A stretch of DNA of 64,000 nucleotides, taken from Ranitomeya imitator. Lineage: Eukaryota. The translations under genes were made by a program, and so were the position numbers. This document shows, in pieces, positions 1 to 30,009 of the stretch (the first letter of the stretch is position 1; each line of letters begins with the position of its first letter). The stretch is taken from positions 19,344,001 through 19,408,000 of the forward strand of contig NC_091286.1 in NCBI RefSeq assembly GCF_032444005.1, read 5' to 3'. The notes beneath the pieces are model-generated. The model ran no database searches and had not been told where the DNA came from. It saw only the letters and a program-made list of their open reading frames with translations.

Positions 1-458
1 CTAGCTCCTCCTTCCATCTAGCTCCTCCCTCCTTCTAACTCCTCCCTCCTAGCTCCTCCCTTATATATCCTCCCTCCTTATAACTCTTCCCTTCTTCTAG
101 CTCCTCCCTCCTTCTAGCTCCTCCCTCCTTCTAGCTCCTCCCTCCTTCTAACACCTCCCTCCTTCTAGCTCCCCCTCCTTCTAGCTACTTCCTCCTTCTA
201 ACTCCTCCCACCTTCTAGCTCCTCCCTGATTCTAGCTCCTCCCTCCTAACACCTCCCTCCTTCTAACTCCTCCCTCCTAGCTCCCCCTCCTTCTAGCTCC
301 TCCCTCCTAACTCCTCCCTTCTTCTAGCTCCTCCCTCCTAACTCCTCCCTCCGTCTAACACCTCCCTCCGTCTAACACCTCCCTCTTTCTAACACCTCCC
401 TCCTTCTAACACCTCCCTCCTTCTAGCTCCTCCCTCCTTCGAACTCCTCCCTCCTTCG
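1..458. repeat. Pyrimidine-rich minisatellite, ~17 bp unit (CTAGCTCCTCCCTCCTT), truncated by window start
   Basis: Repeated ctagctcctccctcctt / ctaacacctccctcc variants from base 1 to ~458. Confidence 0.95.
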
Positions 459-488
459 TAGAATTTTAAAAGCACCAACTGCCATTTC

Positions 489-612
489 CTATCTCAGGAA
501 AGGGAAAGTCTGTTTTCTCTGAATTCAGATTTTACAGATTTTACCTGCAAATTTAGAGTGAACGATCCGTCCAGGAGGAGAAAGAAGCAGATTTCTCTGA
601 TAAGATCTATCA
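489..612 (+). promoter_or_regulatory. Candidate erythroid promoter remnant: three WGATAR sites upstream of the globin-like ATG
   Basis: CTATCT 489-494, TGATAA 598-603, CTATCA 607-612, ~80-200 bp upstream of ATG 691. Short motifs, so could be chance. Confidence 0.35.
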
Positions 613-690
613 CAACGTTTCTTATTTTCATGAGTACTATTGATTCATTAAAGATGAAGATGTTGGCTCACTGGTTAGTCCCTCATCCAC

Positions 691-782
691 ATGGTGGGAT
701 TATTTTGGGCTGTGAAACGCTTTGTGCAGTTGCAAGATGGCAGCATAATGCAGGAGAATGGGGTCCCATGGAGACCCCGACG
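691..782 (+). pseudogene. Globin-like exon 1 (degraded)
   Basis: ccacATGGTG start; gca gga gaa tgg ggt (AGEWG) at 750-764 in a shifted frame; donor CG|GTACGG at 782/783; 92 nt from ATG to donor. Confidence 0.5.
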
Positions 783-951
783 GTACGGCGACAAACAAGT
801 CCCAAAAAGTCGGAGCTAGTTAGATTTTGTGGTGACTTAGTTGCTGTGGTCATGGTACCCTAAGGGTCAATGTGGCCCCATTCACCTGCATTACACTGCG
901 ATGTGGCAGCAGTATAAAGAGACCTTTGGCGGCACGACCTGTGTATTCCAG

Positions 952-1129
952 CTCCGCACATGTGGCCCCCAACGTGGCACAGCACATGGAATGGAGACAT
1001 AGAGGTCCTATCTCAGCTAATGGACAGGCACGGCCCAAAGATCAGTATTCTCCAACTAGTGGTGAAACGGCAACTCACAGCACACCAGGACAGCCGCAGC
1101 AGAGCTTCAAGGGTCCGCCCCGGACACCG
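952..1129 (+). pseudogene. Globin-like exon 2 (degraded)
   Basis: Acceptor tgtattccAG ends 951. The frame containing codon 1029-1031 reads WPPTWHSTWNGDIEVLSQLMDRHGPKI...LTAHQDSRSRASRVRPGH, aligning to alpha-type YPxT...DLSxGSAQxxxHGxKV...LSALSDLHAYxLRVDPGN. Donor CCG|GTAACC at 1129/1130. About 25 nt shorter than a normal alpha exon 2. Confidence 0.58.
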
Positions 1130-1144
1130 GTAACCTTATATATG

Positions 1145-4100
1145 CCCCGACTGTATCAGTGCTGACCCCTGATTGTATCAGTGCTGACCCCCAATTGTAT
1201 CAGTGCTGACCCCCGACTGTATCAGTGCTGACCCCCGACTGTATCAGTGCTGACCCCCCATGGTATCAGTGCTGACCCCCAATTGTATCAGTGCTGACCC
1301 CCGACTGTATCAGTGCTGACCCCCGATTGTATCAGTGCTGACCCCTGATTGTATCAGTGCTGACCCCCCGATTGTATCAGTGCTGACCCCCGACTGTATC
1401 AGTGCTGACCCCCGATTGTATCAGTGCTGACCCCCCGATTGTATCAGTGCTGACCCCCCGATTGTATCAGTGCTGACCCCGATTGTATCAGTGCTGACCC
1501 CCCGATTGTATCAGTGCTGAGCCACCCGATTGTATCAGTGCTGAGCCCCCGACTGTATCAGTGCTGACCTCCGATTGTATCAGTGCTGACCCCCCGATTG
1601 TATCAGTGCTGAGCCCCCGATTGTATCAGTGCTGACCCCCCGATTGTATCAGTGCTGAGCCCCCATTGTATCAGTGCTGAGCCCCCGATTGTATCAGTGC
1701 TGAGCCCCCATTGTATCATTGCTGAGCCCCCAACTGTATCAGGGCTGACCCCTGATCGTATCAGTGCTGACCCCGATTGTATCAGTGCTGAGCCCCCGAC
1801 TGTATCAGTGCTGACCCCTGATTGTATCTGTGCTGACCCCCCAAAGTATCAGTGCTGACCCCCAGATCATATCAGTGCTGACCCCCCGATTGTATCAGTG
1901 CTGACCCCCCGACTGTATCTGTGCTGACCCCCCATAGTATCAGTGCTGAGCCCCCGACTGTATCAGTGCTGACCCCTGATTGTATCTGTGCTGACCCCCC
2001 ATAGTATCAGTGCTGACCCCCGATCATATCAGTGCTGACCCCCCGATTGTATCAGTGCTGACCCCCCGACTGTATCTGTGCTGACCCCCCATAGTATCAG
2101 TGCTGAGCCCCCGACTGTATCAGTGCTGACCCCCGATTGTATCAGTGCTGACCCCCCGACTGTATCTGTGCTGACCCCCCATAGTATCAGTGCTGAGCCC
2201 CCGACTGTATCAGTGCTGACCCCTGATTGTATCTGTGCTGACCCCCCATAGTATCAGTGCTGACCCCCGATCATATCAGTGCTGACCCCCCGATTGTATC
2301 AGTGCTGACCCCCCGACTGTATCTGTGCTGACCCCCCATAGTATCAGTGCTGAGCCCCCGACTGTATCAGTGCTGACCCCCGATTGTATCAGTGCTGACC
2401 CCCCGACTGTATCAGTGCTGACCCCCCCCGACTGTATCAGTGTTGACCCCTGATTGTATCAGTGCTGACCCCCCATTGTATCAGTGCTGACACCCGATTG
2501 TATCAGTGCTGACCCCCCACTGTATCAGTGCAGACCCCTGATTGTATCAGTGCTGACCCCCGATTGCATCAGTGCAGACCCCCGATTGTATCAGTGCTGA
2601 CCCCCCATTGTATCAGTGCAGACCCCTGATTGTATCAGTGCTGACCCCCGATTGTATCAGTGCTGACCCCCGATTGTATCAGTGCAGACCCCTGATTGTA
2701 TCAGTGCTGACCCCCGATTGTATCAGTGCAGACCCCTGATTGTATCAGTGCTGACCCCCGATTGTATCAGTGCAGACCCCTGATTGTATCAGTGCAGACC
2801 CCTGATTGTATCAGTGCTGACCCCCGATTGCATCAGTGCAGACCCCCGATTGTATCAGTGCTGACCCCCCATTGTATCAGTGCTGATCCCCGATTGTATC
2901 AGTGCTGACCCCCGATTGTATCAGTGCTGACCCCCGATTGTATCAGTGTTGACCCCCCGATTGTATCAGTGCTGACCCCTGATTGTATCAGTGCTGACCC
3001 CTGATTGTATCAGTGCTGACCCCCCGATTGTATCAGTGCAGACCCCTGATTGTATCAGTGCTGACCCCCCGATTGTATCAGTGCTGAGCCCCCATTGTAT
3101 CAGTGCTGAGCCCCCGATTGTATCAGTGCTGAGCCCCCATTGTATCATTGCTGAGCCCCCAACTGTATCAGGGCTGACCCCTGATCGTATCAGTGCTGAC
3201 CCCGATTGTATCAGTGCTGAGCCCCCGACTGTATCAGTGCTGACCCCTGATTGTATCTGTGCTGACCCCCCAAAGTATCAGTGCTGACCCCCAGATCATA
3301 TCAGTGCTGACCCCCCGATTGTATCAGTGCTGACCCCCCGACTGTATCTGTGCTGACCCCCCATAGTATCAGTGCTGAGCCCCCGACTGTATCAGTGCTG
3401 ACCCCTGATTGTATCTGTGCTGACCCCCCATAGTATCAGTGCTGACCCCCGATCATATCAGTGCTGACCCCCCGATTGTATCAGTGCTGACCCCCCGACT
3501 GTATCTGTGCTGACCCCCCATAGTATCAGTGCTGAGCCCCCGACTGTATCAGTGCTGACCCCCGATTGTATCAGTGCTGACCCCCCGACTGTATCTGTGC
3601 TGACCCCCCATAGTATCAGTGCTGAGCCCCCGACTGTATCAGTGCTGACCCCTGATTGTATCTGTGCTGACCCCCCATAGTATCAGTGCTGACCCCCGAT
3701 CATATCAGTGCTGACCCCCCGATTGTATCAGTGCTGACCCCCCGACTGTATCTGTGCTGACCCCCCATAGTATCAGTGCTGAGCCCCCGACTGTATCAGT
3801 GCTGACCCCCGATTGTATCAGTGCTGACCCCCCGACTGTATCAGTGCTGACCCCCCCCGACTGTATCAGTGTTGACCCCTGATTGTATCAGTGCTGACCC
3901 CCCATTGTATCAGTGCTGACACCCGATTGTATCAGTGCTGACCCCCCACTGTATCAGTGCAGACCCCTGATTGTATCAGTGCTGACCCCCGATTGCATCA
4001 GTGCAGACCCCCGATTGTATCAGTGCTGACCCCCCATTGTATCAGTGCAGACCCCTGATTGTATCAGTGCTGACCCCCGATTGTATCAGTGCTGACCCCC

Positions 4101-6700
4101 GATTGTATCAGTGCAGACCCCTGATTGTATCAGTGCTGACCCCCGATTGTATCAGTGCAGACCCCTGATTGTATCAGTGCTGACCCCCGATTGTATCAGT
4201 GCAGACCCCTGATTGTATCAGTGCAGACCCCTGATTGTATCAGTGCTGACCCCCGATTGCATCAGTGCAGACCCCCGATTGTATCAGTGCTGACCCCCCA
4301 TTGTATCAGTGCTGATCCCCGATTGTATCAGTGCTGACCCCCGATTGTATCAGTGCTGACCCCCGATTGTATCAGTGTTGACCCCCCGATTGTATCAGTG
4401 CTGACCCCTGATTGTATCAGTGCTGACCCCTGATTGTATCAGTGCTGACCCCCCGATTGTATCAGTGCAGACCCCTGATTGTATCAGTGCTGACCCCTAA
4501 GTGTATCAGTGCTGACCCCCGATTGTATCAGTGCAGACCCCCGATTGTATCAGTGCTGACCCCTGATTGTATCAGTGCTGACCCCCGATTGTATCAGTGC
4601 TGACCCCCCGATTGTATCAGTGCTGACCCCCGATTGTATCAGTGCTGACCCCTGATTGTATCAGTGCTGACCCCCGATTGTATCAGTGCTGACCCCCCGA
4701 TTGTATCAGTGCTGACCCCTGATTGTATCAGTGCTGACCCCCCGATTGTATCAGTGCTGACCCCTGATTGTATCAGTGCTGACCCCCGATTGTATCAGTG
4801 CTGACCCCCCGATTGTATCAGTGCTGACCCCCGATTGTATCAGTGCTGACCCCCGATTGTATCAGTGCTGACCCCCGATTGTATCAGTGCAGACCCCCGA
4901 TTGTATCAGTGCTGACCCCCGATTGTATCAGTGCTGACCCCCCGATTGTATCAGTGCTGAACCCTAAGTGTATCAGTGCTGACCCCCCGATTGTATCAGT
5001 GCTGACACCCGATTGTATCAGTGCTGAGCCCCCGACTGTATCAGTGCTGACCCCCCGACTGTATCAGTGTTGACCCCCGATTGTATCAGTGCTGACCCCC
5101 CGATTGTATCAGTGCTGACCCCTGATTGTATCAGTGCAGACCCCCGATTGTATCAGTGCTGACCCCTGATTGTATCAGTGCTGACCCCCCGATTGTATCA
5201 GTGCTGACCCCCGATTGTATCAGTGCTGACCCCCGACTGTATCAGTGCTGACCCCCGATTGTATCAGTGCTGACCCCCGACTGTATCAGTGCTGACCCCC
5301 CGATCGTATCAGTGCTGACCCCCGACTGTATCAGTGCTGACCCCCCGATCGTATCAGTGCTGACCCCCCGATCGTATCAGTGCTGACCCCTGATTGTATC
5401 AGTGCTGACCCCCGATTGTATCAGTGCTGACCCCCGATTGTATCAGTGCTGACCCCCGATTGTATCAGTGCAGACCCCCGATTGTATCAGTGCTGACCCC
5501 TGATTGTATCAGTGCTGACCCCCGATTGTATCAGTGCTGACCCCTGATTGTATCAGTGCTGACCCCCGATTGTATCAGTGCTGACCCCCGATTGTATCAG
5601 TGCAGACCCCCGATTGTATCAGTGCTGACCCCTGATTGTATCAGTGCTGACCCCCGATTGTATCAGTGCTGACCCCCCGATTGTATCAGTGCTGAACCCT
5701 AAGTGTATCAGTGCTGACCCCCGATTGTATCAGTGCTGACCCCTGATTGTATCAGTGCAGACCCCCGATTGTATCAGTGCTGACCCCTGATTGTATCAGT
5801 GCTGACCCCCCGATTGTATCAGTGCTGACCCCCGACTGTATCAGTGCTGACCCCCGATTGTATCAGTGCTGACCCCCGACTGTATCAGTGCTGACCCCCC
5901 GATCGTATCAGTGCTGACCCCCCGATCGTATCAGTGCTGACCCCTGATCGTATCAGTGCTGACCCCCGATTGTATCAGTGCTGACCCCCGATTGTATCAG
6001 TGCTGACCCCCGACTGTATCAGTGCTGACCCCCGATTGTATCAGTGCTGACCCCCGATTGTATCAGTGCTGACCCCCGATTGTATCAGTGCAGACCCCCG
6101 ATTGTATCAGTGCTGACCCCTGATTGTATCAGTGCTGACCCCTGATTGTATCAGTGCTGACCCCCGATTGTATCAGTGCTGACCCCTGATTGTATCAGTG
6201 CTGACCCCCGATTGTATCAGTGCTGACCCCCCGATTGTATCAGTGCTGAACCCTAAGTGTATCAGTGCTGACCCCCGATTGTATCAGTGCTGACCCCTGA
6301 TTGTATCAGTGCAGACCCCCGATTGTATCAGTGCTGACCCCTGATTGTATCAGTGCTGACCCCCCGATTGTATCAGTGCTGACCCCCGATTGTATCAGTG
6401 CTGACCCCCGATTGTATCAGTGCTGACCCCCCGATTGTATCAGTGCTGACCCCCGATTGTATCAGTGCTGACCCCCCATTGTATCAGTGCTGACCCCCGA
6501 TTGTATCAGTGCTGACCCCCGACTGTATCAGTGCTGACCCCCGATCGTATCAGTGCTGACCCCCGACTGTATCAGTGCTGACCCCCGATCGTATCAGTGC
6601 TGACCCCCGACTGTATCAGTGCTGACCCCCCGATTGTATCAGTGCTGACCCCCGATTGTATCAGTGCTGACCCCCGATTGTATCAGTGCTGACCCCCGAT
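1145..6700. repeat. Large minisatellite (~5.55 kb, ~260 copies of 21-22 bp GCTGACCCC(C)CGATTGTATCAGT) filling globin intron 2
   Basis: Directly visible tandem array with variable C-run length and diagnostic variant units. Confidence 0.99.
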
Positions 6701-6714
6701 CTTCTTCCTTCCAG

Positions 6715-6828
6715 CTCCTCGGAGCCGCCATCCAGGAGGTTCTCGCCGCTCGTTATCCCGCAGACTTCCACCAAGCCGCCTGGGAGAAGTTCCTTAACGA
6801 GGCTTCTGGAATCATGGTCACCGGCTAA
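6715..6828 (+). CDS. Globin exon 3 (G-H helices): LLGAAIQEVLAARYPADFHQAAWEKFLNEASGIMVTG*
   Basis: Polypyrimidine acceptor cttcttccttcCAG ends 6714. Phase-0 start at LL, as in Hb exon 3. Resembles LLSHxIQVxLAxHFPxEFxxxxHAAWDKFL, with a ~3-residue gap at the GH/H start and no terminal Tyr. TAA at 6826-6828. Confidence 0.85.
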   Translation, partial: LLGAAIQEVLAARYPADFHQAAWEKFLNEASGIMVTG

Positions 6829-7026
6829 TCTCTGAAGACCCCGCTGGGATATTGGTCCAAGTCACGACGTCGTCTGTCCGATCCTTAGATTCTCCATCCT
6901 GACCCGGTGACCCCCCATCCACAGAGTAACCTGCCGAGGACTTACCCCCTGCGTCCTCCTGTTAGAGACTCCTGAGCCGGAATAAGCAAGGGTTAATTAT
7001 TAATGTACTTTGTTTTTTTGTTGAAA

Positions 7027-7032
7027 AATAAA
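7027..7032 (+). terminator. Candidate poly(A) signal AATAAA of the globin-like gene
   Basis: AATAAA ~200 nt after the stop codon. Confidence 0.45.
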
Positions 7033-9001
7033 ATTACATTACAAAATTTGCAGAAGAGGAGACGTTTTTGTGACCCGCAGCGGAGCCAATACTGCACGGC
7101 CAAGATCTTTATCACATGCTCTTATCATGGACGATGAGGGGTCTCCTTGTGGAGAGAGAGCTGGTCGGCGTCTTTACAACGGTCGTCTCCAACCTGTGGT
7201 TCTGCAGCTTTGGCAAAACTACAAATCCCAGCAAGCCCCAACAGATATGAGTTGTGGTTCTGAAAAAGCCGTAGGACAATGGGTTGGAGAGGCTGCTGCG
7301 GAGCAAGGCTTCCTGGGAAAAGTATGCAAATGAGCTCCTTACTAAGCAGAAAGTCTAGTGCCACCTAGTGGCCGGAGGCATAAAGACCTCATGAGATGTA
7401 TGGGGCACAGTGCAGACTGCACCATATTGTGCTGCACTGAACGCGGGCATCACACATGGCGGTGCCAAACGCTCCACTTTGGCTAATGGAGGGCGATGTT
7501 ACTTTATTTGCCAACTTTACCGAGGACCTGATTCATTGTTGCATTTGCCATTTTTTGTCTTTTTGGTGTTTTTTACTTTGCGCCAAATTCTTTTAAAGAG
7601 CATTTTTCATTCTCCTTTGTACGCCTTCACCAACGCCGGCATCTGCTTTTTTTTCAGCTAATTAATCAATTGTGACTTTTTAAAAAGCTGCAAAACACTG
7701 AAGTAAAATACTGACCAAATACTGATAGTGTGAACGAGGCCTGAAGATACTTTCCCAAAATTAGTTTTTTACACTGCGTATTTTTTTTTTAAAAAAAACT
7801 GCTAGAAACCTATTTTACTTAACAGGTGAAGAAAATCTGCAACATCAAAAACTCACCAAAAATTAATCGTGGGAACGTGGGTCATCCGAAAAAATCATTC
7901 CGATTATGCTAATCGCAGACTGATCAGCGTTGGATCATAGTGTGCGCCAATCTTCTCAGAAGTGGAGAAAAAAAAAAAGGTTTCTCCATCTTCTCCATAG
8001 TGTCAGTCTGTGAAAATCAGATGTCACCCGGGTGCGGTCTGATGTTTTCTCCGAACCCACAGACCTGATTTTGGGGTTTCAAGTTTCTTTGAAAAGTTGC
8101 AAAAGTTGGTGCAAATTTTTTAAATAAAGTTTGAGCTATTTGTTTTTTATTTTTTGCAAATTGTGCAACTTTTGGAGTTAAAAAATCACAAAACAGGAGA
8201 AAGGCAACATTATATAATTTTTTTTTTATTTTGCGCAAAATCCATAAACCACGTGATTCATCTTGAAGAACAAAACAACATCAAAGAATACCAAAAAATG
8301 GAAAATGACTTAAAAAATACAAAAATAGAAAATGACTTTCAAATATACAAGTGACGAATCAGGCGCAAGTTGCAGGATTGCCCTGACCCTCTGTGGGTTA
8401 ATTTTAATTATCTGCTTGCAGGACCAAGCCCCGGGCTTTGGTATTAAGGACAGGTTCACACAGGGATTTAGTAACAGAAATTCTGTAAAATCCTCCTCTA
8501 AAAATCCTTCAAAACCGCTTGGAAATATCTGTGAGCGATTCGGTTTGCTGCTTGCATGAGGAGTTTTTTTTTTTAGCTCTTTTCTTTCCCTGAAGATATT
8601 TAAAAAAAAACGACTGGTGAAAAAAATAATGCATCTCACCCCTCTCAAGCAGATCATGATGGAATCCGCTCCAAATTGTCCAATCAAAAGGCTGCAAAAA
8701 CCTATTCAAGAATAGTAAAAAAAAACTCTTCCAAAACTCTTCAGCAAAATGAAAAAAACTCCAAAAAACTCAGCAGAAAAATAACGTTTCCAGAAGCGGA
8801 TTCAGCTTGAAAATCTATGCACATACCAAAGTTTTTCAGGAGTTAAAAAAAATTATACGTTTTTTAAGCATTCCAGAAATGGTTCTTTTTTTATGGGGAG
8901 AAGTCATGTATTTTACCGTTTTTGAAGAAAATTGAGTGGTTTTATTTTGTTTTTACAGTTTTTTTGATTGGGCGATGCCTACTTTGGAAAAGTTTTATTT
9001 A

Positions 9002-12256: not shown

Positions 12257-13980
12257 AGGGTCCTCAGCCTGTCCAGGTGAGTTCCTGTGTGATCCCAGGT
12301 GAGCTGATCACCTAGAAGGGCCCATTACTCCTTATATAAGAGTGATCGTTGGGTGGTGAAGGATCTGTGGTCTTCAGGGAAGTGCTGAGATTGACAAGGA
12401 CAATGTCTGGGGTGAAGAACACCATCCGTCTTCTTGTAGACCCTGCAAAGAAAGACTCCATCGGCCTGACTTACATCGTCTGTGTTATTCTGGAAGGTTT
12501 GGCCGGAATTTCCAAATCTGAGGTTTTTTGCTTGCAGGATTCTCCCAGGCGTGGTCTGTATGATATCACCTTCCACCATGGAAGTAGTTGTCTTAGTTTC
12601 CTTGCCTGTCTGAAAAGCCACAAGAGGAAGTCCGTTTTGGAGCACATCAAGTTTTTCCCACTCTTTGGGATGCGAGAGAGGCCCATGATCGTGCACATGT
12701 TCAACCCTCACGCTGACATTGAGGTGGTGATGACCTACCTGGAACAATACTGCGATTCTGTACGTGGCGGCGTCAAGCAGCGGAATGTCTTTGGTATCTT
12801 TAATGGGAAGTATAAGTTGTGGGTCTGTCTGAAGTTTGAGCCGCTCTATACGTCTGGCATAAAGCACCCTCCAGCAAACTTCTCCATTGCGGGTAATCAA
12901 GGTTTTCTGATGTATCATGGGCAGCCGAGCTCCCACAAGAAGCTCCAACCCTCTGGCTATTGTCCTTTTGAGAAGATATGTCGTAGCTGTGGACAGCTAT
13001 CTCATGATGGTGGTGACCCTAACGAATGCGATATATGTGGACTGGTGGGGAATCTAAGACTTAATGGTGAGCAAGAAACCATGATGGAACATGAGACTTC
13101 AATGGAGGATGAGACCCCAGAAGCCCACCCTACTAAGATAAGCAGACATGATGGTGCACTGGTGACTGTTGCAGGAAGGGAAACCACCGCTAACTGAGGA
13201 CCTGATCGATGATGGGGATGGTTTATCCTTCAGGTAGGAATATGCTTCTCCATATGTAGGAGGGATGAGAGGCGGCCAATGCAAGAGTTATGGTTGGCAG
13301 ATAGAGGTGAGCGTGTTCTGATCTGTTATATCAAGAAGTTGTGACAAACTTGTTTATTTAGAAGCCTAGGAAGTAATCTGGATAAGTCTTCTAATGGGTC
13401 AATGGGGGGGTTCTGACTTAGTTGACTTGATATTTGGGCCTGAGCTGGTCTAAAGATGCTGCTGAACTGTGCGGTTTCAGTCTTGCACTATTGTTTTTTT
13501 ATTTATTTTTTTACTTTATTTTTCTGACTCCACATAGAAGCCTCCCAAGAAAAGGGAAAAAAAAAAAAAACCTGCAGAAACTAATCTCTCCTATAAGATA
13601 AATAGCAGCTTTACATCTGCACCAGAAACTTGTCAAATAAGTGGTGGCCTTAAACAAAAAAAAAAAAAAAGAAAAAAAAAAAATACATACTGTTTGGAGG
13701 TGATCCTGTATGGGGGGCACCGGCGGGCTGATGGTCTATGTGCTGGTAACTGAGGGTGAGCGATGGCGCTGACATCTTGTACATTTTGTCTCCTTAGAGT
13801 CCTTCACGTAAAGTTCCCTCAAGAATGGAAGAGCTGGAGAATCTCTGGGGTTCTGACAGATGATAAAAAAAATTTACTGATTATTTTTTGCGTTATTTAC
13901 TTTTATGATAAAATGTTTTGATTTTAATTTTCAACATTCAGCTTGTAACTTGGTGATTTTTGTCTTTAAAAATAAAAACC
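12257..13980 (+). mobile_element. Internally deleted L1/Tx1-clade non-LTR retrotransposon (ORF1 retained, ORF2 essentially absent)
   Basis: ORF1-like protein followed by T-rich 3' sequence ending in AATAAAAA ~13971-13978; boundaries approximate. Confidence 0.55.
12349..13197 (+). CDS. Tx1/L1-type ORF1 (ZCCHC3-like nucleic-acid-binding protein), partly degenerate zinc knuckles
   Basis: 282 aa ORF with family-like motifs: VFCLQD...YDITF, VHMFNP, FGIFNGKY, HPPANFSIAGNQGFLMYHGQP, CRSCGQLSH. Confidence 0.75.
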   Translation: MGGEGSVVFREVLRLTRTMSGVKNTIRLLVDPAKKDSIGLTYIVCVILEGLAGISKSEVFCLQDSPRRGLYDITFHHGSSCLSFLACLKSHKRKSVLEHIKFFPLFGMRERPMIVHMFNPHADIEVVMTYLEQYCDSVRGGVKQRNVFGIFNGKYKLWVCLKFEPLYTSGIKHPPANFSIAGNQGFLMYHGQPSSHKKLQPSGYCPFEKICRSCGQLSHDGGDPNECDICGLVGNLRLNGEQETMMEHETSMEDETPEAHPTKISRHDGALVTVAGRETTAN

Positions 13981-16249: not shown

Positions 16250-17829
16250 CAGGTCCTTCTCAAAAAATTAGCATATAGTGTTAAATTTCATTATTTACCA
16301 TAATGTAATGATTACAATTAAACTTTCATATATTATAGATTCATTATCCACCAACTGAAATTTGTCAGGTCTTTTATTGTTTTAATACTGATGATTTTGG
16401 CATACAACTCCTGATAACCCAAAAAACCTGTCTCAATAAATTAGCATATCAAGAAAAGGTTCTCTAAACGACCTATTACCCTAATCTTCTGAATCAACTA
16501 ATTAACTCTAAACACATGCAAAAGATACCTGAGGCTTTAATAAACTCCCTGCCTGGTTCATTACTCAAAACCCCCATCATGGGTAAGACTAGCGACCTGA
16601 CAGATGTCAAGAAGGCCATCATTGACACCCTCAAGCAAGAGGGTAAGACCCAGAAAGAAATTTCTCAACAAATAGGCTGTTCCCAGAGTGCTGTATCAAG
16701 GCACCTCAATGGTAAGTCTGTTGGAAGGAAACAATGTGGCAGAAAACGCTGTACAACGAGAAGAGGAGACCGGACCCTGAGGAAGATTGTGGAGAAGGAG
16801 CGATTCCAGACCTTGGGGAACCTGAGGAAGCAGTGGACTGAGTCTGGTGTGGAAACATCCAGAGCCACCGTGCACAGGCGTGTGCAGGAAATGGGCTACA
16901 GGTGCCGCATTCCCCAGGTAAAGCCACTTTTGAGCTACAGAGAAGCAGCACTGGACTGTTGATAAGTGGTCCCAAGTACTTTTTTCTGATGAAAGCAAAT
17001 TTTGCATGTCATTCGGAAATCAAGGTGCCAGAGTCTGGAGGAAGACTGGGGAGAAGGAAATGCCAAAATGCCTGAAGTCCAGTGTCAAGTACCCACAGTC
17101 AGTGATGGTGTGGGGTGCCATGTCAGCTGCTGGTGTTGGTCCACTGTGTTTCATCAAGGGCAGGGTCAATGCAGCTAGCTATCAGGAGATTTTGGAGCAC
17201 TTCATGCTTCCATCGGCTGAAATGCTTTATGGAGATGAAGATTTCATTTTTCAGCACGACCTGGCACCTGCTCACAGTGCCAAAACCACTGGTAAATGGT
17301 TTACTGACCATGGTATTACTGTGCTCAATTGGCCTGCCAACTCTCCTGACCTGAACCCCATAGAGAATCTGTGGGATATTGTGAAGAGAAAGTTGAGAGA
17401 CGCAAGACCCAACACTCTGGATGAGCTTAAGGCCACTATTGAAGCATCCTGGGCCTCCATAACATCTCAGCAGTGTCACAGGCTGATTGCCTCCATGCCA
17501 CGCCGCATTGAAGCAGTCATTTCTGCCAAAGGATTCCCCACCAAGTATTGAGTGCATAACTGAACATTATTATTTGATGGTTTTTTTGTTTGTAATTAAA
17601 AAACACTTTTATTTGATTGGATGGGTGAAATATGCTAATTTATTGAGACAGGTTTTTTGGGTTATCAGGAGTTGTATGCCAAAATCATCAGTATTAAAAC
17701 AATAAAAGAGCTGACAAATTTCAGTTGGTGGATAATGAATCTATAATATATGAAAGTTTAATTGTAATCATTACATTATGGTAAATAATGAAATTTAACA
17801 CTATATGCTAATTTTTTGAGAAGGACCTG
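16250..17829 (+). mobile_element. Tc1 transposon, IR/DR type, ~200 bp TIRs, TA TSD
   Basis: TA|CAGGTCCTTCTCAAAAAATTAGCATAT ... ATATGCTAATTTTTTGAGAAGGACCTG|TA. TIRs nearly identical (one mismatch seen). Repeat AAATTAGCATAT at outer and inner TIR ends. Confidence 0.97.
16579..17551 (+). pseudogene. Tc1 transposase (DD34E), frameshifted near 16933
   Basis: MGKTSDLTD...HTH region, then in the second frame WSQVLFSDESKF, FQHDLAPAH, WPANSPDLNPIENLW; 34 residues between second D and E. Confidence 0.93.
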
Positions 17830-19156: not shown

Positions 19157-22100
19157 ATGGCCGAAAAGGACCTTCCACAGTTCCCCAATGCTGAAACAGA
19201 GCAAATACAACCTGATACTGTCCATTATGAAGACCAGGAAGCGGAGCCCGCTTCCACAGCAGACCCAGATGCACGACCAGTACGTTCCATCAAGCCAACA
19301 TTAAAGGTCCTCGAGAATTACTGTTCCACAAGGGATGAGTTCAATGACAACTTGGACGACCTATGGGAACGAGTCGCCTCCCTTATGTCAAGCGTCCAAC
19401 GCCATAAAAATGATGCAGCGGGTTTACAGGACACTATAAGACAGCTAGACGTGGCCCACGGCAGATACAAGAGACTGTCCACAAAGTATGCTGCCTTCCT
19501 AAAAGAATCTAAAATCGACGAAGCCCTATCAGAGTTAAGCAAGGCAGATTCCACAGACAGAGAAAGGGACGCCGCCGTGCAAGACGCCAAAGATAAAGCG
19601 GAGCTTCGTATCACCCATCTGCAAGAAACTAGATCGCACAGGTCAGCCTCGTCTAAACACTCTGCTCGGTCATACAAATCATCCTGCTCAAGAACTTCAG
19701 CCCTCAGCGACAGAATCCTAGAGGCCCGTTTAAATGCAGAGCGGTCGAAACTAAGACGTTCATACACCGAAAAGAAAGCAGAAGCAGAGGCTCGAGCAAA
19801 GATTCTTCAAACAGAAGCAGAAGCGAAGAGAGCAGAAGCAGAGGCTCGAGCAAAGATTCTTCAAACAGAAGCAGAAGCGAAGAGAGCAGAAGCAGAGGCT
19901 CGAGCAAAGATTCTTCAAACAGAAGCAGAAGCGAAGAGAGCAGAAGCAGAGGCTCGAGCAAAGATTCTTCAAACAGAAGCAGAGGCTCAAGCAAGGATTC
20001 TTCAAACAGAAATGGAGGAAGAAATTGCATTAGCCGAAGTAAAAATACTCGAGCAAGCATTGAAGCAAAACCTCGACCCAATTTGCCTGCCACCACAGGA
20101 AGAAGATGACCCAGCTGTTCGTACCAGAGACTACGTGCAGAAACAGATACCTGCAGCGCACACCTTCTCCAGTGACGTTCAACCCAACATTGCGGAAACG
20201 TCCAAGTCAGCCCAACCTATGGTGCCAGTATCGCCCACAGCCCCTACAGAGACCCAAGACCAACGCCGTGATGTACCCCCTCAGGAGCAATCATCATCGC
20301 AAGACGACCACAAGGCACACTCCAGCCCGCCTCCACAGTTCAAGCAGCAGTCATCGGAATCTCTAGAGGTTAAACCACAGCTCAACCCTGCAGCGACATC
20401 ATTCTACCCGGGAACAATTCACCTTTCCACGCCACACAGCTTATACGCCCGAGGGGCACCACAAGCTAATATGGTAACAAGGAGTGAAGGATCAGACATG
20501 TCCGAGTTTGCCAGGTTCATGGTGAGCAGGGAGCTAATCAGCACTAGCCTCTCAAAATTCGACGACCGTGCAGAGAACTACAGAGCCTGGAAAGCAACCT
20601 TCAAGGCTGCCATTGCTGATCTCAACCTATCCGTGGAGCAGGAGCTCGACCTCATGGTAAAATGGTTGGGTCCTGAATCCACAAACCGTATCAAGAGTCT
20701 TAGGACCGTCTATGTGGGGCAAGCTGAAGCAGGTCTCGCTGCTGCCTGGCAGAGACTCGAAAGAACCTACGGCAGCGCTGAAGCCATAGAAAAGTCCCTA
20801 TTCAAGAGACTGCAGAACGTTCCAAGGATCAACCTTAAGGAAGCCCACAAGCTTCTGGACTTAAGTGATCTGCTTATGGAGCTGGAACTTGCTAAAAGAG
20901 ACCCTCGTCTGTCATGACTGTGCTACCTGGACACTGCCCATGGGGTGAACCCAATCGTCTCAAAGCTGCTACATAGTCTGCAAGAGAAGTGGGCAGTGTG
21001 TGTCTCCAGGTATAAAAGGTCACATGACGTCACCTTTCCTCCGTTCATTCAGTTCTGCAAGTTCATTGACGAACAAGCCCAAATGAGGAACGACCCTAGC
21101 CTCGACTTCCTGGAGTCTAACACTGCAGCTCCAGCAACACCTTCATCAAGGTATGAAAGCGTCGCACATAGACGCAAGGACTCAAGGAACAGTGTAAGCA
21201 TCAGAAAGACTAACCTGCCATCACCTGCAGTACCTGCCGACAAGCAGTACACTATTCCGTCGAGGGATAAGTCTTTCAATCGTGAGTGTCCCATTCACAA
21301 AAAACCACACTCACTGAACAAATGTAGAGGCTTCAGGTCCAAAACCATGCAGGAGCGCAAGAAAATCCTCAACGAACTTGGGGTATGTTTCAAGTGCTGC
21401 GCTTCATCAGAACACATGGCCAAGGACTGTAAATCTGCCATTAAGTGTGAAGTGTCATAGCGACAGACACCCATCAGCCTTGCACCCAGGCTCAGCCACC
21501 AGCGATCCAGCAGTCGCAGTTACCTCTGGTCCCGCTACAAACCATGGCGGGGAGCCACAGAATCACGCCAAGTCCACCACAGCTGTGTCCTGCTCATGCT
21601 CAGAGGTATGTGGGGAGAATCAAAGTGCTAAATGCTGTGCCAGGATATGCCTAATCAGAGTCTATCCAGAAGGGCAACCAGAGAAGGCTGTAAAAATGTA
21701 TGCCATCATTGACGATCAGAGCAATCGATCCCTAGCTGGACCTAAGTTCTTTGAAGCCTTTAGAATCAAGGGACCAGCAACGCCCTACACTCTGAATACT
21801 TGCTCGGGGCGCATAGAGACTAGCGGCAGAAGAGCACAAGGTTTCATCGCTTCTCCTGTCAATGAAGACGTAGAAATACCCCTAACTACGCTAATTGAAT
21901 GCGATCAAATACCAGACCAAAGGGATGAGATCCCTACCCCAGAAGCTGCTTTCCACCAACCACACTTAAGGCACCTAGCCAGCGTTATCCCACCTTTGGA
22001 CACAGATGCTGAAATCCTACTTCTGCTCGGCAGAGACAATTTGAGGATACATAAGGTCCGCCAACAGTGTAATGGTCCTGACTACGCCCCCTACGCCCAG

Positions 22101-24305
22101 AGACTTGACTTGGGGTGGGTAGTCATAGGAAATGTATGCTTGGACCAAACAGGAGTCCACTCCTTTAAGACGTACGTACGCCGAGACGGGCGCACTACCT
22201 TCTGCAAACCATGTCCTCATCACTATGAGGTGAAGGAAAAGCTTCCAGATTCCGTAGAGCTGCCTGATGTTATCCCTTCTCCCTATGCAGACGACTTGGG
22301 AAAATTGGTGTTTCATACCACTAAGGATGACAACAAAGTAGCCCCATCTATGGAAGACAAGGAATTTGTCAGGATAATGGACAATGAGTTCCTTAAGGAC
22401 GAAACCAATCACTGGGTTTTCCCCTTACCCTTCCGAGCTACCAGGGTAAGGCTCCCGAACAATCGTGAACAAGCCTTGTCCAGATTTAACTCTCTCCAGC
22501 GCACGCTAAGCAATAAACCGGAGATGAAAGAACACATTGTCACCTTTATGGGCAAAATATTCCATAACAACCATGTGGAGCCAGCGTCTCCCTTAAAGGA
22601 AAACGAGGAGTGCTGGTACCTACCCTCATTTGGAGTATATCACCCGAAGAAACCTAAACAAATTAGAGTTGTCTTTGATTCAAGCGCCAAACATCAAGGC
22701 GTATCTCTCAATGATGTCCTCCTCACAGGTCCTAATCTGACAAACAACTTAGTAGGAGTGTTGATGAGGTTCAGGAAAGAGCCCATTGCCATCACCGCCG
22801 ACATTGAACAGATGTTCCACTGTTTCATAGTCCGAGAGGACCACAGGAATTTCCTCAGGTTCCTGTGGTACAAGGACAATGACCCCAGCAAAGAGATGGT
22901 GGAGTATCGCATGCGGGTGCACGTATTCGGGAACAGCCCTTCACCCGCTGTGGCAACATATGGCCTGCGGAGAACCGCACAAGAAGGAGAGTCCGAGTAT
23001 GGAACAGACGCCAGAGACTTTGTAGAGAAAGACTTCTACGTAGATGATGGACTAAAATCTCTACCTACAGAAGAAGCTGCAATCGACCTACTCAAAAGGA
23101 CCCAACATATGCTGTACCGAGCTAAGCTTAGACTGCACAAAATTGCTTCAAACAGCCCGGCTGTCATGAGAGCCTTTGAGTCAAGCGACCACGCACCTGG
23201 ATTCAAGGACATAGACCTGGGACCAGACCGTCCGCCTGTGCAGAGAAGCTTAGGCCTGAGGTGGAACCTGTCAGCCGACACCTTCGGATTCCAAATCAAC
23301 TGTGCAGACAAACCATTCACTAAACGTGGTGTCCTGTCAGTGGTAAATAGCCTGTATGACCCACTGGGATTCGTAGCACCAATTACCATACAAGGTAAAT
23401 CCCTTCTGAGACAGTTGTCCGAAACTGTCAAGGACTGGGATACCCCTCTACCTCCTGATAAGGAACCAAAATGGGAAACCTGGAAGCAGTCTTTGTGTGC
23501 CTTGGATAAAATCCATATACCGAGATGCTACGCTGGAATCTCACTTGCTGCTAGCACCAGGACGGAACTCCATGTGTTCTCGGATGCATCCACGGAGGCC
23601 ATTGCAGCTGTTGTCTACCTGAAGGTAACGGGATCTGACAATCAAGATCATGTTGGGTTCGTTTTCGGCAAAGCTAAGTTGGCTCCCAAGCCTGACCACA
23701 CTATTCCCAGGCTGGAACTCTGTGGGGCTGTGCTTGCAGTAGAACTCGCAGACTTTATTCAGCATGAGCTGGACACTCACATAGATGACGTACAATACTA
23801 CAGTGACAGTAAAGTTGTCTTAGGTTACATCTACAACCAAACAAGGCGCTTCTACATGTACGTCAGTAACCGCATTGAGAGAATAAGAAGGTCTTCCAAA
23901 CCTGAACAGTGGCACTATATCCCATCTGAACTTAATCCAGCCGACCATGCCACTAGACCTATGTCTATAAATTCCTTTGCTAACTCTTCTTGGCTTTCAG
24001 GTCCAAAGTTTCTGCTGGAACAGAAGGGAAGTGAATGTGTTCAGGAAGTCTTCAGCATCCAGGATCCGGACGATGATCCAGAAGTCCGCTCCGAGGTCAG
24101 TGCTCTGGCCACGAACGCTAAACCAACCTCCTCCCTCGGTTGCCAGTGCTTCAAACGCTTCTCCAATTGGATGAAACTCATTAAGACTATTGCAAGGTTA
24201 GTCCACATTGCGAGATCTTATCACAAGCCACATGGAGACAAAGACTGTCATGGTTGGCACGTCTGCCAAAAAATACTCACTATCGAGGACATTCCGGTAG
24301 GATAA
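19157..24305 (+). pseudogene. BEL/Pao gag-pol polyprotein, disrupted
   Basis: Gag with zinc knuckles (CPIHKKPHSLNKC, CFKCCASSEHMAKDC), protease YAIIDDQS, RT FYVDDGL, RNase H HVFSDAS / KAKLAP. In-frame TGA at 20915-20917, frameshift ~21450, truncation after RNase H. Confidence 0.93.
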
Positions 24306-26785: not shown

Positions 26786-29700
26786 TAACATAGTAACATA
26801 GTTAGTAAGGCCGAAAAAAGACATTTGTCCATCCAGTTCAGCCTATATTCCGTCATAATAAATCCCCAGATCTACGTCCTTTTACAGAACCTAATAATTG
26901 TATGATACAATATTGTTCTGCTCCAGGAAGACATCCAGGCCTCTCTTGAACCCCTCGACTGAGTTCGCCATCACCACCTCCTCAGGCAAGCAATTCCAGA
27001 TTCTCACTGCCCTAACAGTAAAGAATCCTCTTCTATGTTGGTGGAAAAACCTTCTCTCCTCCAGACGCAAAGAATGCCCCCTTGTGCCCGTCACCTTCCT
27101 TGGTATAAACAGATCCTCAGCGAGATATTTGTATTGTCCCCTTATATACTTATACATGGTTATTAGATCGCCCCTCAGTCGTCTTTTTTCTAGACTAAAT
27201 AATCCTAATTTCGCTAATCTATCTGGGTATTGTAGTTCTCCCATCCCCTTTATTAATTTTGTTGCCTCCTTTGTACTCTCTCTAGTTCCATTATATCCTT
27301 CCTGAGCACCGGTGCCCAAAACTGGACACAGTACTCCATGTGCGGTCTAACTAGGGATTTGTACAGAGGCAGTATAATGCTCTCATCATGTGTATCCAGA
27401 CCTCTTTTAATGCACCCCATGATCCTGTTTGCCTTGGCAGCTGCTGCCTGGCACTGGCTGCTCCAGGTAAGTTTATCATTAACTAGGATCCCCAAGTCCT
27501 TCTCCCTGTCAGATTTACCCAGTGGTTTCCCGTTCAGTGTGTAATGGTGATATTGATTCCCTCTTCCCATGTGTATAACCTTACATTTATCATTGTTAAA
27601 CCTCATCTGCCACCTTTCAGCCCAAGTTTCCAACTTATCCAGATCCATCTGTAGCAGAATACTATCTTCTCTTGTATTAACTGCTTTACATAGTTTTGTA
27701 TCATCTGCAAATATCGATATTTTACTGTGTAAACCTTCTACCAGATCATTAATGAATATGTTGAAGAGAACAGGTCCCAATACTGACCCCTGCGGTACCC
27801 CACTGGTCACAGCGACCCAGTTAGAGACTATACCATTTATAACCACCCTCTGCTTTCTATCACTAAGCCAGTTACTAACCCATTTACACACATTTTCCCC
27901 CAGACCAAGCATTCTCATTTTGTGTACCAACCTCTTGTGCGGCACGGTATCAAACGCTTTGGAAAAATCGAGATATACCACGTCCAATGACTCACCGTGG
28001 TCCAGCCTATAGCTTACCTCTTCATAAAAACTGATTAGATTGGTTTGACAGGAGCGATTTCTCATAAACCCATGCTGATATGGAGTTAAACAGTTATTCT
28101 CATTGAGATAATCCAGAATAACATCCCTCAGAAACCCTTCACATATTTTACCAACAATAGAGGTTAGACTTACTGGCCTATAATTTCCAGGTTCACTTTT
28201 AGAGCCCTTTTTGAATATTGGCACCACATTTGCTATGCGCCAATCCTGCGGAACAGACCCTGTCGCTATAGAGTCACTAAAAATAAGAAATAATGGTTTA
28301 TCTATTACATTACTTAGTTCTCTTAGTACTCGTGGGTGTATGCCATCCGGACCCGGAGATTTATCTATTTTAATCTTATTTAGCCGGTTTCGCACCTCTT
28401 CTTGGGTTAGATTGGTGACCCTTAATATAGGGTTTTCATTGTTTCTTGGGATTTCACCTAGCATTTCATTTTCCACCGTGAATACCGTGGAGAAGAAGGT
28501 GTTTAATATGTTAGCTTTTTCCTCGTCATCTACAACCATTCTTTCCTCACTATTTTTTAAGGGGCCTACATTTTCAGTTTTTATTCTTTTACTATTGATA
28601 TAGTTGAAGAACAGTTTGGGATTAGTTTTACTCTCCTTAGCAATGTGCTTCTCTGTTTCCTTTTTGGCAGCTTTAATTAGTTTTTTAGATAAAGTATTTT
28701 TCTCCCTATAGTTTTTTAGAGCTTCAATGGTGCCATCCTGCTTTAGTAGTGCAAATGCTTTCTTTTTACTGTTAATTGCCTGTCTTACTTCTTTGTTTAG
28801 CCACATTGGGTTTTTCCTATTTCTAGTCCTTTTATTCCCACAAGGTATAAACCGCTTACACTGCCTATTTAGGATGTTCTTAAACATTTCCCATTTATTA
28901 TCTGTATTCTTATTTCTGAGGATATTGTCCCAGTCTACCAGATTAAGGGCATCTCTAAGCTGTTCAAACTTTGCCTTCCTAAAGTTCAGTGTTTTTGTGA
29001 CTCCCTGACAAGTCCCCCTAGTGAAAGACAGGTGAAACTGCACAATATTGTGGTCGCTATTTCCTAGATGCCCAACCACCTGCAGATTTGTTATTCTGTC
29101 AGGTCTATTAGATAGTATTAGGTCTAAAAGTGCTGCTCCTCTGGTTGGATTCTGCACCAATTGTGAAAGATAATTTTTCTTGGTTATTAGCAGAAACCTG
29201 TTGCCTTTATGGGTTTCACAGGTTTCTGTTTCCCAGTTAATATCCGGGTAGTTAAAGTCCCCCATAACCAGGACCTCATTATGGGTTGCAGCTTCATCTA
29301 TCTGCTTTAGAAGTAGACTTTCCATGCTTTCTGTTATATTTGGGGGTTTGTAACAGACCCCAATGAGAATTTTGTTACCATTTTTCCCTCCATGAATTTC
29401 AACCCATATGGACTCGACATCTTCATTCCCTTCGCTAATATCCTCCCTTAAAGTGGACTTTAGACAAGACTTTACATAGAGACAAACCCCTCCTCCTCTC
29501 CGATTTTTACGATCCTTTCTAAACAGACTGTAACCCTGTAAGTTAACTGCCCAGTCATAGCTTTCATCTAACCATGTCTCGGTTATTCCCACTATGTCAA
29601 AGTTACCTGTAGATATTTCTGCTTCTAGTTCTTCCATCTTGTTTGTCAGGCTTCTGGCGTTTGCGAGCATGCAGTTTAGAGGATTTTGTTTTGTTCCAAT

Positions 29701-29818
29701 CTCCTCACTGTGGATTGTTTTAGAAATGTTCTTACCTCCCTTCTGAGTATGTTTTCCTGGGTCGTCTTTGTACGAGTCTAATGTTTTTCTTCCCGTCCCC
29801 TCTTCTTCTAGTTTAAAG
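26786..29818 (-). mobile_element. CR1 LINE, 5'-truncated, with complete 3' end
   Basis: APE+RT ORF2 on the minus strand; 3' tail (CTATGTTA)n, seen as taacatagtaacatagt at ~26786-26802. Confidence 0.95.
26891..29667 (-). pseudogene. CR1 ORF2 (AP endonuclease + reverse transcriptase), one apparent 1-nt frameshift near 27266
   Basis: MLANARSL, GITETW, MGDFNYPDINW, SDHN, PGPDGIHP, YLDFSKAFD, GVPQGSVLGP, FADD; C-terminus continues in a second frame (ATKLIKG...GLFSLEKRRLRGD). Confidence 0.93.
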
Positions 29819-30009
29819 TGTGTCTTTCCGAGGTGTAGCATTGGCTACTGTGGGGGGTCATCCTCAACAATTTAGGTTGAAAAAGTGACTGTTGGATTTA
29901 CCAAGTGGAGACTCTTATCCCAGTAGGTCTGAATGCAGATTGTTAAATGGAATCTTTTCTGAAAAACAATTACTTGGTTATTATATGTAAATATTTTGAG
30001 ATTTTCTTA

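What the first reader, a model, noticed from the sequence alone, without database searches (positions are those of the whole stretch)
1130..6714. Intron 2 is a ~260-fold amplification of its own branch-point segment
Seen: the array starts ~15 nt after the donor (GT at 1130) and ends 14 nt before the exon. Removing all but one unit leaves a ~60-nt intron. Every unit carries CTGAC (yUnAy branch consensus). In the last unit the branch A (6692) is 22 nt from the acceptor G (6714), so the repeat itself is the only nearby branch site. Each unit also has a downstream TATCAG that could act as a decoy 3' splice site lacking a pyrimidine tract. Established: human zeta-globin introns also carry VNTRs. 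Inference: expansion of a splice-signal element that could alter splicing and may have contributed to, or followed, gene decay.
Basis: partly seen in the sequence, partly recalled or inferred. Interest (0 to 1): 0.7.

Follow-up and report, generated by a model that had tools for sequence, protein, structure and literature searches.

The report
Minisatellite filling a frog globin-relic intron
A 5.6-kb stretch made of about 250 copies of a 22-base unit sits directly in front of the last exon of a decayed embryonic-type alpha-globin gene in a frog; the repeat is real, but it looks like one more young, tolerated repeat expansion in a very repeat-prone genome, and its effect on splicing could not be tested.

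Summary
The array is real. It spans 1145-6700, has a 22/23-bp unit and 249-250 copies. It starts 15 nt after a GT at 1130 and ends 14 nt before a globin-like third exon at 6715-6825. That exon matches human zeta-globin (E 0.002) and begins exactly at the conserved G7.0 intron position.

Two details are overstated:
- CTGAC is present in 191 of about 250 units, not in every unit.
- The upstream "exon 2" and its donor are unproven. No frame of 642-1130 gives a globin hit. The open three-exon frame appears in 6% of shuffles.

The branch-point reading holds only by geometry. The last CTGAC (A at 6692, 22 nt from the AG) is the only yUnAy in the AG-free zone. However, 36% of random 22-mers carry yUnAy, and the motif is no better conserved than the rest of the unit.

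The array is young: it contains a perfect 1,450-nt internal self-match. Its core TCAGTGCTGA is a quasi-palindrome, so neighbouring units pair into hairpins.

RNA reads and orthologous frog introns were out of reach. Earlier notes of this scan report the same kind of splice-signal minisatellite elsewhere in this genome (PELP1, MRTO4, BTBD9).

Verdict: a new member of a known kind, of low to moderate interest.

The parts
691..782 (+). Putative exon 1 of the three-exon model (ATG start, ends after 2 nt of a codon, phase as globin B12.2). Unproven.
   Evidence: Open frame read. No Pfam hit. The model arises in 6.2% of shuffles.
841..1129 (+). Putative exon 2, open in the frame that joins exon 3 in phase 0. 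Not recognisable as globin, and about 80 nt longer than a normal alpha-like exon 2.
   Evidence: No globin hit in Pfam or PDB in any frame. No homologue of 54-171 aa in 5.8 billion proteins. AlphaFold2 pLDDT 52, no helices. By eye only, LSQLMDRHGPK at 1008-1040 in another frame resembles the F-helix.
1130..1144 (+). Candidate donor GT (CCG|GTAACC, no +5 G) and the 15 unique nt before the array.
   Evidence: No similarity to the repeat unit.
1145..6700 (+). Minisatellite: 249-250 units of 22/23 nt, consensus CCCCCGATTGTATCAGTGCTGA.
1619..4497 (+). Two perfect tandem copies of a 1,429-nt block (about 65 units) inside the array. Either a very recent duplication or an assembly artefact.
   Evidence: Exact 1,450-nt self-match at offset 1429. 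Repeated unit-type pattern.
6689..6693 (+). Last CTGAC, with the candidate branch A at 6692, 22 nt from the acceptor G.
   Evidence: the only yTnAy in the AG-free zone 6687-6712.
6701..6714 (+). Unique pyrimidine tract and acceptor, CTTCTTCCTTCCAG.
   Evidence: The pyrimidine fraction is 89% here against 65% before the TATCAG copies.
6715..6828 (+). Globin-like third exon (37 codons plus TAA), closest to zeta-globin. It has a 3-residue gap and lacks the C-terminal Tyr-Arg.
   Evidence: PDB 3w4u/1jeb zeta chains, E 0.0023, query residues 5-34 on chain residues 105-137. Pfam Globin E 0.028, 15.4 bits, below the cut-off of 22.
7027..7032 (+). AATAAA, about 200 nt after the stop codon.
   Evidence: Read.

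Best explanation
This is a young minisatellite that grew in place. It grew by replication slippage and unequal exchange from about 22 nt of native sequence lying just upstream of the pyrimidine tract of the third exon of an embryonic/larval-type (zeta-like) alpha-globin gene relic. Growth was probably helped by the quasi-palindromic core TCAGTGCTGA, which lets neighbouring units pair on the + strand.

Because the amplified piece lies at branch-point distance, each unit carries a branch-like CTGAC and a weak CAG. Only the last copy is followed by a real pyrimidine tract and acceptor. The host gene looks dead or at least unrecognisable upstream.

The array is therefore most likely a tolerated by-product of a repeat-prone genome with no role of its own.

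Shown: the array, its edges, its youth, the hairpin potential and the globin identity of exon 3.
Inferred: in-place origin, branch-site identity and lack of function.
For: - Array and edges. The flanks hold no degenerate copies, and no copy lies elsewhere in the window.
- Youth: a perfect 1,450-nt internal self-match, and a few unit types make up most of the array.
- Variation is concentrated at the CpG (C to T in 52 units) and the next 3 nt, not shaped around CTGAC.
- Hairpins between units: RNA z -5.5, + strand DNA z -4.8, - strand DNA z -0.4.
- Exon 3 is zeta-globin-like and begins at the conserved intron position (G7.0 from PMC3087553).
- Exons 1 and 2 are not recognisable.
- The rest of the window is transposons and other minisatellites.
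- Unchecked earlier notes report the same kind of array in PELP1, MRTO4 and BTBD9 of this genome.
Against: - A three-exon frame with the globin intron phases (2 and 0) is open from ATG 691 to the stop at 6826. This happens in only 6.2% of shuffles, so a live, fast-evolving gene is not excluded.
- Exon 3 is much better kept than the supposed exons 1-2, which uniform pseudogene decay does not predict.
- In-place origin was not tested against orthologues or against the rest of the genome.
- A 58-nt ancestral intron would be unusually short for a vertebrate (own knowledge).
Confidence: 0.6

Rival explanations
1. Exon 3 is an orphan relic, or the true exon 2 lies upstream of the window. In that case 1130 is a chance GT and the array did not arise from a once 60-nt intron. 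It grew from arbitrary intronic or intergenic sequence, or from an inserted element. The CTGAC would still sit at branch distance of the acceptor.
For: - No globin signal in any frame of 642-1130, and no homologue of the in-frame ORF.
- The donor lacks +5 G.
- Exon 2 would be about 80 nt too long, and both introns would be only about 58 nt.
- A second minisatellite runs off the window start at 1-457.
Against: - Colinear by-eye remnants: MV.L..A.K..V at 691, AGEWG at about 750, LS.L.D.H..K at 1008-1040, and SFK at 1103-1111.
- The open frame has the correct intron phases (p about 0.06).
Confidence: 0.25
2. The gene is alive (a 164-codon product). In that case the array acts on splicing, as a reservoir or sink of branch sites and weak acceptors whose number tunes how efficiently exon 3 is joined.
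For: - The open frame has globin intron phases.
- There are 191 CTGAC and 229 TATCAG motifs.
- The acceptor and poly(A) signal are intact.
Against: - The product lacks any recognisable E or F helix or either histidine, and it lacks the C-terminal Tyr-Arg.
- The decoys have 16-17 nt spacing and 65% pyrimidines, and they are buried in hairpins.
- There is no extra conservation of the motif.
- No RNA evidence was obtainable.
Confidence: 0.1
3. The array is a regulatory or chromatin element of a globin cluster, like the human pseudo-zeta VNTR. Each unit holds TGCTGAC (a Maf/NF-E2 half-site, own knowledge) and, on the other strand, a GATA-like core.
For: - The motifs are present in the consensus.
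- The human pseudo-zeta VNTR in intron 2 of HBZP1 affects alpha-globin expression (PMC13018553).
Against: - Only half-sites are present, and the GATA core has the wrong 3' base.
- Many motifs could be read into any 22-mer.
- The G5 runs are 17 nt apart and lie on the template strand, so G-quadruplexes are unlikely.
- No other globin exon is found in the 64 kb.
Confidence: 0.03

Closest known systems
Human zeta / pseudo-zeta globin intron VNTRs (the pseudo-zeta VNTR lies in intron 2 of HBZP1)
   Same: A variable tandem repeat fills the second intron of an embryonic alpha-like globin gene or pseudogene (PMC13018553).
   Different: The human unit is (CGCGGGGCGGGG)n, 96% GC and G-quadruplex forming. 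The frog unit is 22 nt and about 55% GC, with C5 runs on the sense strand, and is unrelated in sequence. A shared origin is not suggested. No effect on expression is known here.
Splice-site minisatellites: amphioxus globin and Adh3 'mirages', human F7 IVS7 37-bp VNTR
   Same: A minisatellite next to a splice site multiplies look-alike splice signals. In the known cases normal splicing persists (PMC3087553; PMC1557585 abstract).
   Different: Those units span the exon-intron boundary and so copy the real splice site plus exon sequence. This array stops 14 nt short of the exon and 15 nt short of the GT, and it copies only the branch-distance segment.
Branch-site and acceptor-side minisatellites noted earlier in this same genome (PELP1, MRTO4, BTBD9)
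   Same: A tiny intron or intron end is amplified about 50-120 times, according to unchecked notes of this scan.
   Different: Here the host is a globin relic of doubtful integrity, the copy number is higher (about 250), and the unit is self-complementary.

Membership tests
Vertebrate alpha-like (zeta/larval) globin gene | Globin domain match above the curated threshold | tested here: not met
Exon 3 alone scores 15.4 bits against a cut-off of 22. Exon 1 and 2 pieces give no hit.
Vertebrate alpha-like (zeta/larval) globin gene | Third exon homologous to the globin G-H helices and starting at intron position G7.0 | tested here: met
   Zeta-globin chains, E 0.0023, query residue 5 on chain residue 105, so residue 1 falls on 101 (LL). 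The acceptor is in phase 0. The G7.0 position is from PMC3087553.
Vertebrate alpha-like (zeta/larval) globin gene | Exon 2 with distal (E7) and proximal (F8) histidines in frame | tested here: not met
   No globin similarity in the open frame 842-1129. An F-helix-like LSQLMDRH appears only in another frame and only by eye.
Vertebrate alpha-like (zeta/larval) globin gene | C-terminal Tyr-Arg of alpha-type chains | tested here: not met
   The exon ends ...IMVTG*.
Minisatellite / VNTR | Head-to-tail units of 10-100 bp with interspersed variant units and higher-order blocks | tested here: met
Minisatellite / VNTR | Length polymorphism between alleles | not testable with these tools
Splice-site ('mirage', F7-type) minisatellite | The unit spans an exon-intron boundary, so each copy holds the true splice site | tested here: not met
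   The array lies wholly between 1145 and 6700, and the flanks share nothing with the unit.
   The last CTGAC is the only yUnAy in the AG-free zone, at -22. No lariat or RNA data and no orthologue were available. The chance rate of yUnAy in a 22-mer is 36%.

The most novel reading that the evidence does not exclude
Frog and human would have independently placed a large VNTR in the second intron of an embryonic alpha-like globin gene or pseudogene. The frog array would be transcribed in larval erythroid cells. Its roughly 250 self-pairing units, each holding a branch-like site and a weak acceptor inside a hairpin, would make splicing of the last exon, or expression of neighbouring globin genes, depend on repeat length.
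Probability: 0.05. Interest if true: 0.55.

Novelty: new member of a known kind. Interest (0 to 1): 0.25.

Why it matters
Practical value:
- It marks an unannotated globin relic.
- It warns annotators that the three-exon reading upstream of the array is weak.
- It flags a perfect 1.4-kb block inside the array that should be checked against long reads.

If the acceptor is used, the locus would be a natural test piece. It would have one good 3' splice site behind about 230 weak ones that share its branch sequence, and RNA hairpins that could hide them.

It also adds to the pattern, seen repeatedly in this genome by this scan, that very short introns are filled by minisatellites grown from their own splice-signal region.

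Tried and rejected
- **RNA and DNA reads.** I stopped there, so read laying was never used. After them, no DNA pattern or DNA similarity search was sent for those stretches. They went only to tools that take a translation by reference:
  - exon 3 (6700-6825) to the search for homologous proteins;
  - exon 3 (6715-6825) to the protein-atlas search;
  - 6664-6825 to an exact look-up with the look-up of encoding contigs;
  - 842-1129 to a fold with structure prediction.
- **Comparators.**
  - Exon 3 against 1.84 billion representative proteins gave only two repetitive junk hits.
  - The 37-aa exon 3 was too short for the search for homologous proteins. The same exon lengthened by 5 intron codons gave nothing.
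  - The in-frame 98-aa ORF gave nothing.
  - An exact look-up of the 54-aa ORF over exon 3 was not on record.
  - The two-unit DNA pattern had 0 matches in metagenome contigs.
  - No tool here holds other frog genomes, so the orthologue test could not be run.
- **ESM Atlas on exon 3.** It returned only short acetate-kinase fragments below 0.9, which I treat as meaningless.
- **Rfam on 1-9000.** No matches.
- **Internal similarity.** No similarity between 560-1144 and 7050-7700, a possible second promoter or exon 1 (z 1.3). No copies of 458-1144 elsewhere in the window.
- **Joined model.** The spliced three-exon protein was not searched or folded. The exons were searched one by one.
- **Idea rejected.** I considered that the array edge extends over the donor (a donor-derived repeat). 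The flanks score no better than shuffles against the unit.
Full report
**What is there.** Tandem Repeats Finder reports a single array at 1145-6700 with period 22, 249.3 copies, 89% matches and score 8745. A wrap-around alignment to the consensus CCCCCGATTGTATCAGTGCTGA gives 249-250 units, with 74 one-base insertions (mostly an extra base in the C run, which makes 23-mers) and 3 deletions. The array begins 15 nt after a GT at 1130-1131 (CCG|GTAACCTTATATATG) and ends 14 nt before 6715 (CTTCTTCCTTCCAG|CTCCTC). It makes up 5,556 of the 5,585 nt between those points, so one unit plus the flanks would be about 58 nt. The flanks score no better than shuffles against the unit. The edges are therefore sharp, and the array starts (CCCCGAC...) and ends (...CCCCCGAT) in the same phase of the unit. 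No copy of the unit lies elsewhere in the 64-kb window.

- CTGAC occurs in 191 units. 26 units read CAGAC, 22 read CTGAG and a few read other variants. "Every unit" is therefore about three quarters.
- TATCAG occurs 229 times.
- The last CTGAC is at 6689-6693. Its A (6692) is 22 nt from G 6714. It is the only yTnAy downstream of the last AG (6685-6686), that is, in the AG-free zone of the acceptor.
- In the other units the A is 16-17 nt from the next AG. The 18 nt before that AG are 65% pyrimidine, against 89% before the real acceptor.

**The exon behind the array.** The stretch 6715-6825 reads LLGAAIQEVLAARYPADFHQAAWEKFLNEASGIMVTG, followed by TAA.
- Its only hits in the Protein Data Bank are two zeta-globin chains, E 0.0023, with query residues 5-34 on chain residues 105-137. 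This puts the first residue on residue 101, the conserved G7.0 intron position of vertebrate globins (position from PMC3087553).
- Pfam Globin matches at E 0.028 and 15.4 bits, below the cut-off of 22.
- AATAAA lies at 7027-7032.
- Compared with zeta-globin, the exon has a 3-residue gap and lacks the C-terminal Tyr-Arg.

I take this as a real third exon of an embryonic/larval-type alpha-like globin gene. No other such exon is found in the window.

**The supposed exons 1 and 2.** A model 691-782 / 841-1129 / 6715-6825 is open throughout. Its intron phases are those of globin genes: phase 2 for the first intron and phase 0 for the second.
- Dinucleotide shuffles of 458-1144 give such a model 62 times in 1,000, and an open frame of 96 or more codons reaching the array 43 times in 1,000. 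That is suggestive but not strong.
- None of the stop-free pieces of the three frames of 642-1130 matches Globin in Pfam or any globin in the PDB.
- The 98-aa in-frame piece shares no words with any protein of 54-171 aa among 5.8 billion.
- It folds with pLDDT 52 and no helices. This was a single-sequence model, so the result is weak evidence.
- By eye there are colinear scraps in different frames: MV.L..A.K..V at 691, AGEWG near 750, LSQLMDRHGPK at 1008-1040 (like the F-helix LS.LSDLH..K) and SFK at 1103-1111. I could not give these statistical support.

Exon by exon, therefore, only exon 3 is a globin. The likeliest reading is a decayed gene. The main alternative is that exon 3 is an orphan or that its true partner lies upstream of the window. 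In that case the GT at 1130 is a chance GT and the "60-nt intron" falls away.

**Age and growth of the array.**
- Unit types form repeated higher-order patterns.
- There is a perfect 1,450-nt self-match at offset 1429 (1619-3068 equals 3048-4497). This is a duplication of about 65 units with no difference between copies. It is either very recent or an assembly artefact.
- Variation among units is concentrated at the CpG (C to T in 52 units) and the three bases after it. The CTGAC positions agree with the consensus in 98, 90, 100, 100 and 95% of units. The neighbouring GTATCAGTG agrees in 94-100% of units, with eight of its nine positions at 97.6% or more. Nothing points to selection on the branch-like motif.

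The core TCAGTGCTGA is a quasi-palindrome: 10 base pairs if the two central pairs are G-U/T-G wobbles.
- RNA of the last six units plus the exon start folds into hairpins between neighbouring units, with MFE -51.6 kcal/mol and z -5.5; no shuffle of 200 does as well.
- The + strand as DNA gives z -4.8. The - strand gives z -0.4.
- Both the CUGAC and the CAG of each unit lie in these stems. In the minimum-energy fold this includes the last unit.

This offers a route for slippage on one strand. In a transcript it would tend to hide the copies. Both points are inference.

**The branch-point idea.**
- In favour: if the array grew in place, the ancestral sequence at -15 to -36 of the acceptor was one unit. 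The 3' signals of vertebrate introns usually lie within the last 40 nt (PMC1431707 abstract).
- Against reading much into the motif: 36% of random 22-mers of this base composition contain yTnAy, 9.5% contain CTRAY and 1.9% contain CTGAC.
- The same letters can also be read as a Maf/NF-E2 half-site (TGCTGAC, own knowledge) or as part of the palindrome.
- The tests that would decide could not be run. These are orthologous and paralogous introns, a genome-wide count of the unit, and RNA.
  - The protein searches that could have led to frog globin loci found nothing usable.
  - The unit pattern has no match in metagenome contigs.

**Context.**
- The rest of the window is transposon sequence: a ZCCHC3-like ORF, a Tc1/mariner transposase, a BEL/Pao element and a LINE. 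It also holds many other minisatellites.
- Earlier notes of this scan, which I did not check, name the genome as the mimic poison frog. They report several introns filled by minisatellites grown from their own splice signals, including a "branch-site minisatellite" in a once-tiny PELP1 intron that is still spliced normally. The scan has therefore met this kind of thing before, on other DNA of the same genome.
- In the literature the nearest cases are:
  - the human pseudo-zeta VNTR in intron 2 of HBZP1 (PMC13018553);
  - the "mirage" minisatellites at intron-exon boundaries of amphioxus globin genes (PMC3087553);
  - the F7 intron 7 VNTR (PMC1557585).

  The present array differs from the mirage and F7 type in that it does not include a splice site or any exon sequence. 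It differs from the human globin VNTRs in unit, base composition and predicted structure.

**Verdict.** Its meaning is most likely ordinary: a young, tolerated, in-place repeat expansion next to the last exon of a globin relic. The branch-site origin is plausible by position but unproven. A role in splicing or in gene decay is not supported by anything I could test.

Noticed in passing
window 1-457: A second minisatellite with a 17-nt unit (CTAGCTCCTCCCTCCTT), 28 copies and 81% matches runs off the window start, 230 nt upstream of the putative ATG. The globin relic is thus bracketed by tandem repeats.
   Followed up: no
window 1619-4497: A perfect tandem duplication of a 1,429-nt block inside the 22-nt array (1,450-nt exact self-match). 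It may be a very recent event or an assembly artefact, and it needs long reads to settle.
   Followed up: partly
window 596-612 and 7095-7130: GATA-type motifs lie near the relic. TGATAAGATCTATCA (two opposed GATA cores) lies about 85 nt before ATG 691. TTATCA and CTTATCA lie just after the poly(A) signal, followed by CCAAT (about 7084) and CATAAAG (about 7380). Their frequency is not above chance as far as I judged, and no exon was found behind them.
   Followed up: partly
window 12349-13194, 16516-17548, 19157-24302, 27256-29841(-): Transposon ORFs: a ZCCHC3-like RNA-binding ORF, a Tc1/mariner transposase (HTH_Tnp_Tc3_2 plus DDE_3), a BEL/Pao retrotransposon (Peptidase_A17) with a 54-nt coding tandem repeat at 19772-19983, and a LINE endonuclease/reverse transcriptase on the minus strand.
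   Followed up: partly
window 46272-46816 and 59936-60565: Further well-kept minisatellites: a 60-nt unit with 9 copies and 96% matches, and a 34/67/132-nt nested unit with about 19 copies. This fits a very repeat-prone region.
   Followed up: no
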